A stretch of DNA of 63,737 nucleotides, filler included, from Octopus bimaculoides (taxonomy: Eukaryota): NCBI RefSeq assembly GCF_001194135.2. It is 8 parts of 8 records of this genome, joined end to end, with 100 filler letters (N's around TTAATTAATTAA, not from the genome) between each part and the next. Parts side by side here need not be neighbours in the genome. Positions count along the whole stretch, not along the records: positions 1 to 3,066 come from NW_026329187.1; 7 more parts are not named here. One strand, 5' to 3'. The position numbers and the translations under genes are program-made. The notes beneath the pieces were generated by a model. That model searched no databases and was not told where the DNA came from. It saw only the letters and a list, made by a program, of their open reading frames with translations. Of the stretch, positions 1 to 3,110 are shown piece by piece (position 1 is the first letter of the stretch; every line of letters starts with the position of its first letter).

Positions 1-99
1 TGGAAAGCGGACGTTAAACGATGATGATGATGATGATATATATATACACGCACACACATCTATGTATGTATATATATATATAGTTCAAAAAAACAATAA

Positions 100-330
100 T
101 AAAGAAACAAAAAACAACAAAGTGAGGACATGATATGGATAGTATTATTGGACGCTCAGGAAGGAAAGGGAGAGTGTATGACGTTTCGGGTGTAGCCCTT
201 CGTCGGAAAGATGGAAAGTTCGGAAAATGGAAGAACGGAGAAAGAGGAAAATGGTACCGATGCCCACGAGGTTACATGGGTTGTCCTGAAAGTTCATGCC
301 AATTTATAGTAGCTTACCTTTCGGCTTATG
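100..330 (-). mobile_element. Related hammerhead-carrying repeat (diverged subfamily)
   Basis: Minus strand 206-178 reads CCGACGA-a-ggg-ctaca-ccc-GAAAC-GTC. Flanks resemble 48720-48895 (gaggac...gacgctc...gaaag...tgacgtttcg). Confidence 0.5.
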
Positions 331-517
331 TCATGAAACCACCTTAATTCTGGGAAGATGGATATTTTCAAGTTAAAGGAAAGATGGAGAGGTTTTGTGC
401 AACAAAATGGTTCATATTTGGTTGATTAAAAATGTAATGGCAAGTATTTATTGACCTTTTTCTTTCCTTTANNNNNNNNNNCTTTCCTTTAAAATTGGCA
501 TGAACTTTCCAGACAAC

Positions 518-553
<36 letters not shown>

Positions 554-942
554 TCAGTAAATGGTGGGGTTGTGTTAACTGCACTTGGAGAAATGATATG
601 AAAGGAAAAAATAATAATAAGGCAGAATACTAAACTGAAAGCATTTTTAAATATAAATGGGTGTAAAGAAGGTGAGATTGGATTTCAAACAGGTTTTAAG
701 TGCACGGCGTCTTTTGAAGATAAGAAAGGGGGGAAAAAATGTTTTTTTCAAAGAAATAATATGTATATAATACAATAAATATACCAATACATCATAGTGT
801 CTTTAAGCTTTCGAAGTTCAGTAGTTTTCCAGCCATGCAATGAAAACCGGTTTGAAATCCAATTCAATCTTCCTCACACCCATTTATATTAAAACATGCT
901 TTCAGTTTAACATTCTGCCTAATTATTATTTTTTTCCTTTCC

Positions 943-974
<32 letters not shown>

Positions 975-1294
975 GTCCGCTTTCCATGCTAGCATGGGTT
1001 GGACGATTTGACTGAGGACTGGTACCCTTCCTAACACCAACCACTCAGCAAAGTGGACTTAGTGCTTTTTATGTGGCACAAGCACAAGCGAGGTCAGTTG
1101 ACAAACACGTACACCACACACACATACACCACACACACATACACNNNNNNNNNNNNNNNNNNNNNNNNNNNNNNNNNNNNNNNNNNNNNNNNNNNNNNNN
1201 NNNNNNNNNNNNNNNNNNNNNNNNNNNNNNNNNNNNNNNNNNNNNNNNNNNNNNNNNNNNNNNNNNNNNNNNNNNNNNNTGTTACTACAAGAGA

Positions 1295-1462
1295 ATGGTT
1301 GAAATAATTCCAACACATGTGAAGGATGTCTACATCTGCCACATTAAGCAGTTCAAAGACCATCGTGGAATGCTCTGTGAATTATTCAACATGGTCAAAT
1401 ATCCAGAAGAAATAAGAAAACACTTCCCAATTCAACAGATTACTTGGGTGACCAATAGAAAA
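1295..1462 (+). CDS. rmlC: dTDP-4-dehydrorhamnose 3,5-epimerase (RmlC/RfbC cupin), coding exon 1
   Basis: MVEIIPTHVKDVYICHIKQFKDHRGMLCELFN... matches the RmlC N-terminus (D-x-RG-x-x-x-E-x-F). It ends at AAA|GTAAGA (phase 0). The ATG at 1295 lies just after an N gap, so extra upstream coding exons cannot be excluded. Confidence 0.88.
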
Positions 1463-1599
1463 GTAAGAATCACATTTACACATTTATACACCCATGCATA
1501 GAGGCTATGTTTTGTGTGACAATGATCACTCTGTTCTCTCTCTCTCTCTCTCTCACGCACACTGTATAACAATATTTCTTTAATGTTTTATTTTCCCAG

Positions 1600-1824
1600 T
1601 TTGCCCATCGTGGACTCCGTATAGCTGCTTACTCAAAACTCTTAACCTGCATCAAAGGTTCAGTTTACGATGTGGTTGTTGACACGCGACCAGACTCCAG
1701 CACTTACCTACAATGGGTAGGTGTAACTCTGAGTGAAGAGAATGGGTACCAGCTACTCGTACCCCCTGACTGTGGACATGGTTACCTAGCCCTGGAGGAG
1801 GGCTGTGCAGTTGTCTACTGCCAG
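1600..1824 (+). CDS. rmlC: RmlC coding exon 2
   Basis: Acceptor ttttcccag|. Translation FAHRGLRIAAYSKLLTCIKGSVYDVVVDTRPDSSTYLQWVGVTLSEENGYQLLVPPDCGHGYLALEEGCAVVYCQ carries the RmlC motifs (K-L-x-C-x-x-G-x-V-x-DV-x-VD-x-R-x-x-S-x-T; P-x-x-x-x-HG-[FY]; catalytic Tyr). Donor CAG|GTAAGC. 225 nt, phase 0-0. Confidence 0.93.
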
Positions 1825-2374
1825 GTAAGCTTTCTATTTTCTTTGCTAAATTCCATTATTCATATCATGTTTATGCGAACAAGATGAGCATACCGACTAA
1901 GTTGTAGATTGTGAGTTCAAATCTGTTGATGCATATTACTCCTTGTGAAAAGCAGGGACCAAACTATCAGGAAAGGTTCAGCCTAAGCCCACACTCTATC
2001 AATCATCTTGGTGTGATTTGCGATTGGATTTCAATTCTTTATGTTCTGAGTTCAAATGCCACCAACGTTGACTTTGCTTTCATGTTTTTGGGGGTTAATA
2101 AATAAAGTACCAGTCAAGTACTAGAGTCGATGTAATTCACTAACACCTTTCTCCCTAAAATTGTTGGTCTGGTGCCAAAATTTGAAACTTTTATATGCCA
2201 TTGTGTCTGAACTATAGAATGTGAAATGATCAACTGGACAAAGTTACTGGTATGGATAATCAAGTCAAGGCCTTGTTAATTTACATGTGAATATTACAGT
2301 GTCATCAAATATCATAAACTTCATTGAATGTGTATTAGACAATTCACTGTCACACACACATGTTCACACATACA

Positions 2375-2470
2375 TACAAGAAGGTGCTGAAAAGTTCCTG
2401 GGTTTAAGGGCATTGTGAAAGTCTTAGTTGGAAGCCCAACTTTACGAGTTCTTTTATAGGTCTTAGAAAA
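2375..2470 (+). mobile_element. Mariner/Tc1 TIR-like fragment in rmlC intron 2
   Basis: tacaagaaggtgctgaaaagttcctgg... resembles a mariner terminal repeat beginning at TA. Similar relics occur near 6195 (tacagggtgcggcagaaa) and 7915-7950 (ALSDEAHF). Confidence 0.4.
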
Positions 2471-2837
2471 ACTGAAGGACCACTGCAATATGTGTGTGAA
2501 TCTGAGAAGGGAACACGTTAGATAAAGGCTATAGTAGAAGACACTTGCCCAAGGTGCCACATAGTGGGACTGAACCCAGAACTCTGCAATGTGTGTGTGT
2601 GGAATGGCTTGTTTATTCGTCCAAACATGCCACAAGCATATTTGAACTGGTAATAACATTGCATTTATATAAATATCATTGCTTAGTGCTCCTACACCAG
2701 AACTATGTGATTGGGAAGCAAGCTTCTTGTCACAAAACCACCCCTGCACCTATATGCATGTACCATGTTTTTCTTTTCTTATAATATTTTTACATTTTAA
2801 CTTTCCATGATTTAAAATTTTTTAAAATATTTTCTAG

Positions 2838-3039
2838 GGTGGATGTTTCCTGCCGTCAGTTCCTGAAAAATCTGTCCATTTGTTTGATAAAACTGTATCA
2901 ATTGACTGGCCTTTTATTGAGCAGAAAAACAATTTTCTGATATCAGAGAAAGACTCAAAAGTGCCCTTCTTAAATGTGGATATAGAAAAATTTAAACCCA
3001 ATCGCAAAAGAATTCTGATTATTTCTTCAAAAGGTCAAG
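2838..3039 (+). CDS. rmlC: RmlC exon 3 (C-terminus) plus start of a putative RmlD-like SDR domain; the gene continues past the donor
   Basis: Acceptor ttttctag|. GGCFLPSVPEKSVHLFDKTVSIDWPFIEQKNNFLISEKDSKVPFLNVDIEKFKPNRKRILIISSKGQ contains the RmlC terminal IDWP...S-x-KD motif. There is no stop; it ends CAA G|GTGAGT (phase 1). Confidence 0.88.
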
Positions 3040-3110
3040 GTGAGTGATTCTCTGAAAGGTCAAATGNNNNNNNNNNNNNNNNNNNNNNNNNNNNNNNNNN
3101 NNNNNNNNNN

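What the first reader, a model, noticed from the sequence alone, without database searches (positions are those of the whole stretch)
1295..3039. Spliced bacterial-type L-rhamnose pathway epimerase (RmlC) in an apparent octopus genome
Seen: three exons with GT-AG boundaries and matching phases encode a complete RmlC cupin of about 185 aa. Intron 2 contains the same SINE families as the rest of the window, so this is host DNA and not bacterial contamination. Established: RmlC is the third step of dTDP-L-rhamnose synthesis in bacteria. Among animals a rhamnose pathway is mainly characterised in nematodes (C. elegans rml genes), and vertebrates lack one. Inference: cephalopods or molluscs may have an uncharacterised nucleotide-deoxysugar pathway, acquired by ancient horizontal transfer or patchily retained, perhaps for mucus, skin or egg-case glycans.
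Basis: partly seen in the sequence, partly recalled or inferred. Interest (0 to 1): 0.75.

Follow-up and report, generated by a model that had tools for sequence, protein, structure and literature searches.

The report
Octopus RmlC–RmlD fusion gene, first exons
The three exons are real octopus DNA, but they are only the start of a larger, already annotated and experimentally unstudied two-domain gene of the kind that makes activated rhamnose in some algae, and this copy has lost one key catalytic residue.

Summary
Exons 1295-1462, 1600-1824 and 2838-3039 have GT-AG borders and encode a full RmlC cupin domain (Pfam PF00908, E = 2e-39).

- The window is the whole of a 3,066-bp unplaced Octopus bimaculoides scaffold (LGKD02034306.1). 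RefSeq already models this gene as a 200-aa "dTDP-4-dehydrorhamnose 3,5-epimerase" (XP_014790046.1).
Exon 3 ends in phase 1 at a consensus donor.
- In O. sinensis the same three exons open an 11-exon, 507-aa protein: an RmlC domain fused to an RmlD-type reductase. O. vulgaris has a 507-aa orthologue with the same three exons and splice sites.
- Octopus carries two tandem, convergent copies. Argonauta, a cuttlefish, amphioxus, the tunicate Styela and several algae have orthologues.
- The nearest relatives are eukaryotic fusions, not bacteria, so a direct bacterial transfer into cephalopods is not supported.
- The algal fusion enzyme (Prymnesium) is a proven 3,5-epimerase/4-reductase that makes TDP- and UDP-L-rhamnose.

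In this scaffold the catalytic histidine is arginine (CGT at 1618-1620). Every other cephalopod copy keeps histidine. No paper in the library searched describes rhamnose synthesis in cephalopods.

The parts
1280..1294 (+). The 15 nt between the assembly gap (N at 1145-1279) and the ATG. They are in frame and open (CYYKR).
   Evidence: The same tgttactac(a/g)agaga precedes the ATG in O. sinensis and O. vulgaris. Longer isoform models start upstream (P0317 MRKECCYYER-MVEII, P0316), so an upstream start hidden in the gap cannot be excluded.
1295..1462 (+). Coding exon 1 (168 nt, aa 1-56): the N-terminal strands of the RmlC cupin domain.
   Evidence: It is 94.6% identical to the O. sinensis exon and 95.8% to the O. 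vulgaris exon, with the same borders. It is the start of RefSeq model XP_014790046.1.
1463..1599 (+). Intron 1 (137 nt, gt...ag) with a (TC)10 run.
   Evidence: The orthologous intron is about 4.3 kb in O. sinensis and about 6.3 kb in O. vulgaris.
1600..1824 (+). Coding exon 2 (225 nt, aa 57-131): the core of the cupin, with the RGL(H/R) motif, Lys69 and Tyr129.
   Evidence: It is 99.1% identical to both other Octopus species (2 differences in 225 nt).
1618..1620 (+). Codon 63, CGT = Arg, at the position of the catalytic base His63 of Salmonella RmlC.
   Evidence: O. sinensis and O. vulgaris have CAT here. All four full-length Octopus copies keep His, as do Argonauta, the cuttlefish, P0021, P0022, Styela, Branchiostoma and the algal fusions. 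The aligned RGLH of 1dzr is shown.
1825..2837 (+). Intron 2 (1,013 nt, gt...ag) holding interspersed-repeat fragments at 2039-2136, 2384-2525 and 2526-2574.
   Evidence: These segments recur 6, 9 and 15 times in loci L005-L008.
2838..3039 (+). Coding exon 3 (202 nt, aa 132-198 plus the first base of codon 199): the C-terminal part of the cupin (Asp170), a linker, and the first strand of the RmlD domain.
   Evidence: In O. sinensis the exon ends at aa 198 and the next exon starts at aa 199.
3009..3039 (+). Codons 189-198, RILIISSKGQ, plus G of the split Val codon: the start of the RmlD-type Rossmann domain.
   Evidence: Pfam RmlD_sub_bind begins at residue 189 of the full-length orthologue P0320. 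The stretch aligns with R(I/V)L(I/V)IG(A/S)(S/T)GQVG of the homologues.
3040..3066 (+). Donor site (AAG|gtgagt) and the first 27 nt of intron 3. The scaffold ends here. TGA at 3045-3047 is the false stop of the 200-aa RefSeq model.
   Evidence: Exon 4 of the same species lies on chromosome CM046626.1. It starts with TT GGA CAA after its acceptor site, so G3039 + TT gives Val.

Best explanation
What it is (shown). The window is an orphan 3,066-bp scaffold of Octopus bimaculoides. It carries the first three of eleven coding exons of a nuclear gene for a protein of about 507 aa with two domains. The N-terminal domain is an RmlC-type cupin (NDP-4-keto-6-deoxyglucose 3,5-epimerase). The C-terminal domain is an RmlD-type short-chain reductase.

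Where the rest is (shown). Exons 4-11 lie on chromosome CM046626.1, next to assembly gaps. There they are annotated separately as 247-aa 'SpsK' fragments.

Context (shown). Octopus has two tandem, convergent paralogues. This scaffold most resembles the one I call B. The gene belongs to the eukaryotic RmlC-RmlD fusion family.

Function (inferred). The biochemically characterised Prymnesium parvum fusion is the model. By analogy, the cupin domain inverts C3 and C5 of an NDP-4-keto-6-deoxy-D-glucose using a His base and a Tyr acid. That substrate is probably the UDP form, which animal TGDS enzymes make. The reductase domain then reduces C4 with NAD(P)H to give NDP-beta-L-rhamnose.

This copy (shown, with an inferred consequence). 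The His base is replaced by Arg through a single A-to-G change. If that change is real and not an assembly or allelic artefact, the epimerase half of this copy should be inactive or altered.
For: Identity of the window. It is identical to GCA_001194135.2 LGKD02034306.1. P0319 = XP_014790046.1 equals my 198 aa plus 'GE'.

Domains. PF00908 matches at E = 2e-39. Full-length orthologues carry PF00908 at residues 7-176 and PF04321 RmlD_sub_bind at 189-478, E = 3.7e-51. TIGR01221 rmlC and TIGR01214 rmlD are the best NCBIfam matches. PDB matches are RmlC and RmlD structures.

Gene structure. tblastn finds 11 coding blocks in each of O. sinensis and O. vulgaris. Splice sites are identical in three species. 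The phase-1 end of exon 3 joins exon 4 on the O. bimaculoides chromosome. N gaps sit where exons 1-3 should be.

Purifying selection. dN/dS is 0.17-0.44 over the 198 codons.

Transcription in relatives. Contiguous transcript-length contigs of 1.8-2.8 kb encode the 502-503-aa cuttlefish-like orthologues without introns.

Catalytic residues. Lys69, Tyr129 and Asp170 are kept. The SxxxYGKSK reductase motif is kept in the Octopus proteins.

Relatives. The best hits are eukaryotic fusions of about 500 aa. In a neighbour-joining tree, cephalopods form a clade with 98% bootstrap support, and the sampled bacteria are split from the rest at 67%.

Biochemical precedent. P. parvum RmlCD makes TDP- and UDP-beta-L-Rha (PMC6556577). 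Vertebrate TGDS makes UDP-4-keto-6-deoxyglucose (PMC12488480 and PMC13080230).
Against: - No enzyme assay, sugar analysis or transcript from Octopus itself was available. The protein clusters that hold the Octopus copies list no transcript-assembly members.
- The catalytic His is Arg in this scaffold.
- All octopod copies have Ser in place of the first Gly of GxxGxxG, and STNY in place of STDY. Cofactor binding or activity may therefore differ from canonical RmlD.
- Both domains score below NCBIfam's equivalog cut-offs: 113-115 against 155.75 for rmlC, and 159-173 against 224 for rmlD.
- I did not test for a TGDS-type dehydratase or a rhamnosyltransferase in Octopus.
- I found no report of rhamnose in cephalopod glycans.
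Confidence: 0.8

Rival explanations
1. A complete stand-alone RmlC of about 185-200 aa. This is both the reader's reading and the current RefSeq model XP_014790046.1.
For: The cupin domain is whole. Reading past 3039 meets a stop after two codons, TGA at 3045-3047. Stand-alone RmlC does exist in nematodes (PMC10473587).
Against: - Position 3040 is a consensus donor (AAG|GTGAGT) used at the same place in O. sinensis and O. vulgaris.
- The last 10 codons are the first strand of the RmlD domain.
- A matching phase-1 exon 4 exists in the same species.
- Every full-length cephalopod orthologue is 502-543 aa.
- The scaffold simply ends 27 nt later.
Confidence: 0.03
2. A gene acquired by cephalopods, or by molluscs, directly from bacteria, like nematode rml-3.
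For: RmlC and RmlD are typical bacterial enzymes. Bacterial RmlC-RmlD fusions of about 505 aa exist. The gene's distribution in animals is patchy. No bivalve or gastropod orthologue appeared among the named hits.
Against: - The nearest relatives are eukaryotic fusions from amphioxus, Styela and prasinophyte algae, at 39-58% identity and E values down to 1e-73. Bacterial RmlC reaches about 36% and bacterial fusions 31-32%.
- The neighbour-joining tree puts cephalopods inside the eukaryotic fusion group.
- The gene has 11 exons, and its structure is shared across Octopus.

Caveats: the tree is a simple distance tree with 17 bacterial sequences, and support for the bacteria split is only 67%.
Confidence: 0.08
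3. A decaying or non-catalytic copy. In O. bimaculoides this paralogue has lost epimerase activity (His63Arg). It is a pseudoenzyme, a redundant duplicate, or serves as a reductase only.
For: - Arg replaces the catalytic base in this copy only. RmlC needs a His base and a Tyr acid (PMC9095892).
- A second paralogue exists that could cover the function.
- dN/dS is higher on comparisons with this copy (0.31-0.44) than between O. sinensis and O. vulgaris (0.17).
Against: - There are no stops or frameshifts, and all splice sites are intact.
- Exon 2 is otherwise 99% conserved.
- The difference is a single base in a short orphan scaffold of a gapped draft assembly, so an error or a rare allele is possible.
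- The counts behind dN/dS are small (13-14 non-synonymous and 8-12 synonymous changes).
Confidence: 0.3
4. A MAT2B-like regulatory subunit of methionine adenosyltransferase, as several database names say.
For: NCBI and UniRef name the orthologues 'methionine adenosyltransferase 2 subunit beta(-like)'. The C-terminal domain matches human MAT2B structures at E about 5e-17.
Against: - The same domain matches RmlD structures better (E = 5e-21 and 9e-21).
- Its best family models are RmlD ones: TIGR01214 at E about 1e-46 to 1e-51 and PF04321 at E = 3.7e-51.
- The MAT2B chains that matched (315-334 aa) align only to residues 184-474, the RmlD-type domain.
- The name looks like an automatic transfer from the nearest reviewed animal protein.
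Confidence: 0.04

Closest known systems
RmlCD fusion enzyme of Prymnesium parvum and other haptophytes and Gymnodiniaceae (Wagstaff et al. 2019, PMC6556577)
   Same: The architecture is the same: an N-terminal RmlC cupin and a C-terminal RmlD reductase in one chain of about 500 aa, encoded in a eukaryotic nucleus. That enzyme is a proven bifunctional 3,5-epimerase/4-reductase making TDP- and UDP-beta-L-rhamnose. MMETSP algal fusions are among the full-length hits, at 34-36% identity to the N-terminal 198 aa.
   Different: The octopus gene is in an animal and is uncharacterised. Octopod copies have Ser for the first Gly of GxxGxxG and STNY for STDY. This scaffold has Arg for the catalytic His. 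I did not compare it directly with the P. parvum sequence itself.
Bacterial RmlC (dTDP-4-dehydrorhamnose 3,5-epimerase, e.g. Salmonella 1dzr)
   Same: The fold family is the same (PF00908), with about 36% identity end to end. Lys, Tyr and Asp of the active site align.
   Different: The bacterial enzyme is a stand-alone protein of about 183 aa. The octopus domain is fused to a reductase and encoded by spliced exons. It scores below the TIGR01221 equivalog cut-off. His63 is Arg here.
Nematode RML-3 (C. elegans rml-3), the only animal RmlC studied so far
   Same: It is an animal RmlC-type epimerase gene with introns, and part of a rhamnose pathway (PMC10473587).
   Different: RML-3 is a separate protein, reported to nest within bacterial sequences as an interdomain transfer into chromadorean nematodes. 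The octopus domain is part of a fusion and groups with eukaryotic fusions. I made no direct sequence comparison with RML-3.
Plant, fungal and giant-virus NRS/ER (UGER) epimerase-reductases
   Same: They have the same predicted net reaction: NDP-4-keto-6-deoxyglucose to NDP-L-rhamnose. They lie downstream of a UDP-glucose 4,6-dehydratase related to animal TGDS.
   Different: NRS/ER does both steps with a single RmlD-like domain and has no cupin. The octopus protein has a separate cupin domain.
MAT2B (methionine adenosyltransferase regulatory subunit)
   Same: It has an RmlD-like short-chain reductase fold. It is the source of the database names.
   Different: In one search the MAT2B chains match only the reductase half. 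The octopus C-terminal domain matches RmlD models better.

Membership tests
RmlC / dTDP_sugar_isom cupin (PF00908) | Full-length match to the family profile above the curated cut-off | tested here: met
   135.3 bits against a cut-off of 27, model positions 2-166 of 168, E = 2.2e-39.
RmlC equivalog (TIGR01221, the bacterial enzyme in the strict sense) | Score at or above NCBIfam's equivalog cut-off | tested here: not met
   113.9 bits against a cut-off of 155.75. The full-length Octopus, P0021 and Styela proteins fall short as well, at 105-134 bits.
RmlC 3,5-epimerase active site | Catalytic base His (His63 of Salmonella RmlC) | tested here: not met
   Arg63 (CGT at 1618-1620) in the window. 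His is present in all other cephalopod, chordate and algal homologues aligned.
RmlC 3,5-epimerase active site | Catalytic acid Tyr, plus the Lys and Asp partners (Tyr133, Lys73 and Asp170 of Salmonella) | tested here: met
   Tyr129, Lys69 and Asp170 align and are invariant across the nine-sequence alignment.
RmlC 3,5-epimerase | Epimerisation of NDP-4-keto-6-deoxyglucose at C3 and C5 | not testable with these tools
   This needs a coupled enzyme assay or deuterium-exchange NMR.
Eukaryotic RmlC-RmlD fusion (RmlCD) | An RmlC domain followed by an RmlD domain in one reading frame | tested here: met
   The window holds the RmlC domain, the first 10 residues of the RmlD domain and an open donor site. 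Orthologues P0320, P0184 and P0182 carry PF00908 plus PF04321 in 507 aa. Exon 4 of the same species joins in phase.
Eukaryotic RmlC-RmlD fusion (RmlCD) | Closer to other eukaryotic fusions than to bacterial RmlC | tested here: met
   Identity is 39-58% to eukaryotic fusions against about 36% to bacteria. The neighbour-joining tree agrees, with the bacteria split at 67% bootstrap. Support is moderate.
RmlD-type reductase (short-chain dehydrogenase/reductase) | GxxGxxG dinucleotide-binding motif | tested here: inconclusive
   Octopus has SSKGQVG and Argonauta SAKGQVG, where other homologues have G(A/S)(S/T)GQVG. The first Gly is lost in octopods and the last two are kept. Only SSKGQ lies in the window.
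RmlD-type reductase (short-chain dehydrogenase/reductase) | Catalytic Ser/Thr and YxxxK | tested here: met
   FSTNY and YGKSK are present in the O. sinensis and O. vulgaris proteins and in the O. bimaculoides fragments P0315 and P0318. These lie outside the window.
Complete NDP-L-rhamnose pathway in the organism | An upstream NDP-glucose 4,6-dehydratase (TGDS/RmlB type) and a downstream rhamnosyltransferase | not tested
Papers report TGDS homologues across Metazoa (PMC9741107), but I did not check Octopus.

The most novel reading that the evidence does not exclude
Coleoid cephalopods, and with them amphioxus and some tunicates, make NDP-L-rhamnose or a related 6-deoxyhexose themselves. They would do so with TGDS plus an anciently inherited eukaryotic RmlC-RmlD fusion that most animals have lost. 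Nematodes would then not be the only animals with this capacity. Within Octopus, the duplicated gene would be diverging, with one O. bimaculoides copy having lost the epimerase base.
Probability: 0.4. Interest if true: 0.6.

Novelty: new member of a known kind. Interest (0 to 1): 0.42.

Why it matters
**Rhamnose synthesis in animals.** Papers I could read state that nematodes are unique among animals in encoding L-rhamnose synthesis (PMC10473587). A genome survey reports the rml pathway as absent from eukaryotes (bioRxiv 10.1101/854612). An intact, intron-rich RmlC-RmlD gene under purifying selection in five cephalopod species, amphioxus and a tunicate says that picture is incomplete.

**What happens to the TGDS product.** Animal TGDS is now known to make UDP-4-keto-6-deoxyglucose. 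That compound is exactly the substrate such an enzyme would take. These animals therefore offer a direct test of what happens to that metabolite when a downstream enzyme is present.

**Annotation.** The gene is split over three RefSeq models in O. bimaculoides. Across species it is named four different ways: epimerase, SpsK, rfbD and MAT2B-like.

Tried and rejected
- **First protein search with the 198 aa.** It returned only bacterial RmlC at about 36% identity. That would have suggested a bacterial origin. The word index had missed all the close relatives, which the exhaustive search and the profile search then found.
- **Rfam and tRNA scans of the piece.** They gave nothing above noise, only microRNA-like hits on (TA)n runs. 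No tRNA-derived SINE head was recognised.
- **Bootstrapping with Biopython's BLOSUM distance.** It timed out. I replaced it with a Kimura-corrected identity distance.
- **Literature searches for rhamnose in cephalopods, or for this gene in cephalopods, amphioxus or tunicates.** They found nothing relevant. The tunicate and amphioxus gene-transfer papers do not mention it.
- **Search for an Octopus TGDS.** I considered it but could not run it.
- **Contamination, stand-alone RmlC and MAT2B readings.** I considered and rejected all three (see the rival explanations).
Full report
**1. The observation**

I read the piece and rebuilt the exons by script.

| Exon | Coordinates | Length | Borders | Phase at end |
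|---|---|---|---|---|
| 1 | 1295-1462 | 168 nt | starts at ATG; \|gtaaga | 0 |
| 2 | 1600-1824 | 225 nt | cccag\| ; \|gtaagc | 0 |
| 3 | 2838-3039 | 202 nt | tctag\| ; \|gtgagt | 1 |

The joined 198 aa match Pfam dTDP_sugar_isom almost end to end (E = 2.2e-39). They also match about 35 solved RmlC-type structures, best Salmonella 1dzr at E = 1.3e-24.

The ATG lies 15 nt after a 135-N assembly gap, and the frame is open back into that gap (CYYKR). No stop closes exon 3.

**2. Where the window comes from**

A cluster look-up returned a 200-aa RefSeq protein, XP_014790046.1, "dTDP-4-dehydrorhamnose 3,5-epimerase [Octopus bimaculoides]". Its longest contig is 3,066 bp. Its sequence is my 198 aa plus "GE".

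Fetching its contig gave GCA_001194135.2 LGKD02034306.1, which is identical to window 1-3066. So the piece is a whole unplaced scaffold. The gene is already annotated. The annotated stop (TGA at 3045-3047) is reached only by reading into what is really intron 3.

**3. The real gene**

An exhaustive HMMER search of 1.84 billion representative proteins put proteins of about 500 aa at the top. Each matched from its residue 2 to about residue 197. A profile search then named several of them:

| Protein | Species | Length | Identity to the 198 aa |
|---|---|---|---|
| P0182 | O. vulgaris | 507 aa | 94% |
| P0184 | O. sinensis | 507 aa | 94% |
| P0196 | Argonauta hians | 502 aa | 71-72% |
| P0297, P0300 | cuttlefish Acanthosepion pharaonis cluster | 503 aa | not compared (P0297 is 52% identical to full-length P0184) |

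The full-length Octopus orthologue scanned (P0320) carries PF00908 at residues 7-176 and PF04321 (RmlD substrate-binding domain) at 189-478. NCBIfam's rmlC and rmlD models are the best hits for P0320, P0184, P0021 and Styela. PDB matches are RmlC and RmlD structures.

tblastn of the O. sinensis protein against its locus shows 11 coding blocks over 26 kb. The third ends at aa 198 and the fourth begins at aa 199. The three window exons align without indels to O. sinensis and O. vulgaris, with the same splice dinucleotides.

On O. bimaculoides chromosome CM046626.1, exons 4-11 of two convergent copies are present. They are annotated as 247-aa "SpsK" fragments. Runs of N of 1.1-6.6 kb lie where exons 1-3 should be. 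Exon 4 there begins TT GGA CAA after its acceptor, so G3039 + TT gives Val and the protein reads KGQ-V-GQLFF.

The window is therefore the missing 5' end of one of these two genes. By its residues at positions 5, 34 and 51 it is most like the copy I call B.

**4. Host DNA, not contamination**

- The exons are interrupted by introns.
- Orthologous loci sit on chromosome-scale records of two other Octopus species.
- Several window segments recur in 163 kb of other octopus loci, in both orientations:

| Window segment | Copies found |
|---|---|
| 1-39 | 6 |
| 955-1022 | 8-12 |
| 2039-2136 | 6 |
| 2384-2525 | 9 |
| 2526-2574 | 15 |

I could not show that the intron-2 repeats and the upstream repeats belong to one family. 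ARAGORN and Rfam recognise no tRNA-like head.

**5. Active-site check**

Against Salmonella RmlC, Lys69, Tyr129 and Asp170 of the octopus domain align with Lys73, Tyr133 and Asp170. The catalytic base His63 aligns with Arg63.

- The codon is CGT at 1618-1620. O. sinensis and O. vulgaris have CAT.
- Both paralogues of both those species keep His. So do Argonauta, the cuttlefish, P0021, P0022, Styela, Branchiostoma and the algal fusions.
- This is one of only two differences in an exon that is 99.1% conserved.
- RmlC works by a His base and a Tyr acid (PMC9095892). If the G is real, the epimerase half of this copy should be crippled.
- The source is a 3-kb orphan scaffold of a gapped draft, so an error or a rare allele cannot be excluded.

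Two features are shared by all octopods. The first Gly of the reductase GxxGxxG motif is Ser (IISSKGQVG). STDY is STNY. The YGKSK motif is kept.

Nei-Gojobori dN/dS over the 198 codons is:
- 0.31 for window against O. sinensis;
- 0.44 for window against O. vulgaris;
- 0.17 for O. sinensis against O. vulgaris.

These values point to purifying selection, perhaps weaker on this copy, but the counts are small.

**6. Origin**

Named relatives outside cephalopods are the following:
- Styela clava (P0023);
- Branchiostoma belcheri, and a B. floridae hybrid (P0024 cluster);
- Micromonas pusilla (P0025 cluster);
- Cymbomonas;
- Pycnococcus and Pseudoscourfieldia;
- MMETSP algae.

Sequences close to Bigelowiella carry the cupin in a longer protein. 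Rhizarians are reported to have an RmlC/NRS-ER fusion (PMC6556577).

No bivalve or gastropod protein appeared among the named hits. One unidentified transcript (P0022, 51%) is sister to the cephalopods.

A neighbour-joining tree of the cupin domain (53 sequences, 175 columns, 100 bootstraps) gave:
- cephalopods 98%;
- cephalopods plus P0022 97%;
- a weak link to Branchiostoma (32%);
- 17 bacterial sequences, including six bacterial fusions, split from all others in 67% of replicates.

This places the gene in the eukaryotic RmlC-RmlD fusion family. It argues against a direct bacterial transfer into cephalopods. It does not decide between ancient inheritance with many losses and transfer between eukaryotes.

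**7. How it most likely works**

The Prymnesium parvum RmlCD fusion was expressed and shown to be a bifunctional 3,5-epimerase/4-reductase producing TDP- and UDP-beta-L-rhamnose (PMC6556577). Vertebrate TGDS has recently been shown to make UDP-4-keto-6-deoxyglucose (PMC12488480 and PMC13080230).

The inferred mechanism in cephalopods is therefore:
1. TGDS makes NDP-4-keto-6-deoxyglucose.
2. The cupin domain inverts C3 and C5.
3. The reductase domain reduces C4 to give NDP-L-rhamnose.

The domain architecture, gene structure and residue conservation are shown. The substrate, the product, the presence of the partner enzymes and any glycan acceptor are all inferred.

**8. Novelty**

The gene is annotated under four different names in five cephalopod species, so it is not a new gene call. 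I found no paper on it:
- PMC10473587 says nematodes are unique among animals in having the pathway.
- A 2019 survey calls the rml pathway absent from eukaryotes.

I rate it a new member of a known kind, of moderate interest. There is a clear annotation fix to make. The His63Arg difference also needs checking against reads.

Noticed in passing
window 1463-1599, against L005 10169-14472 and L006 10169-16462: Intron 1 is 137 nt in the O. bimaculoides scaffold but about 4.3 kb in O. sinensis and about 6.3 kb in O. vulgaris. Only its first ~20-40 nt and last ~100 nt are shared. This is either repeat insertions in the other two species or a collapsed join in this draft scaffold.
   Followed up: partly
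L005 44657-46262 (minus strand); L007 19917-25035; L008 18528-25035: Octopus has two tandem, convergent RmlC-RmlD paralogues a few kb apart, in O. sinensis, O. vulgaris and O. bimaculoides. In O. bimaculoides, both lack exons 1-3 on the chromosome because of N gaps. The gene is therefore split over at least three RefSeq models.
   Followed up: yes
window 601-708 and 832-939: A 108-nt inverted repeat, 84% complementary, with a 123-nt spacer, lies upstream of the gene. It looks like a small foldback or MITE-like element. No copy was found in 163 kb of other octopus loci.
   Followed up: partly
window 1-82 and 948-1022 (to about 1099): Two copies of an interspersed repeat lie in opposite orientation, ending in (GAT)n and (ATC)n. 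Between them they bracket most of the upstream 1 kb. The repeat recurs up to 12 times in the other octopus loci.
   Followed up: partly
window 277-305 and 492-520, around the 10-N gap at 472-481: A 29-nt inverted repeat, 93% complementary, lies on either side of a short assembly gap. Next to it is an (AT)15 run at 521-551.
   Followed up: no
Orthologue proteins P0182, P0184, P0316, P0320 and P0196 (outside the window, except SSKGQ at 3024-3038): Octopods alone have Ser for the first Gly of the reductase GxxGxxG motif, and STNY where other homologues have STDY. Cuttlefish-like sequences keep IGSTGQVG. This may change cofactor binding.
   Followed up: partly
L003 10001-10531; L004 1038-1568 and 3223-3585: A metagenome contig with eukaryote-like neighbours (Exo84 domains) carries an RmlC-domain piece. 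The shorter contig L004 has the same piece, and there an RmlD-domain piece follows about 1.7 kb downstream. This is probably another intron-split RmlC-RmlD gene in an unidentified eukaryote.
   Followed up: no
L001 and L002 (SRR27666070, SRR27666068): Transcript-length contigs encode an intron-free 502-aa orthologue, 58% identical to the window protein over its first 198 aa and 68% identical to a cuttlefish model. It is probably from a squid or sepiolid. It shows that the fusion is transcribed and spliced in decapodiform cephalopods.
   Followed up: partly
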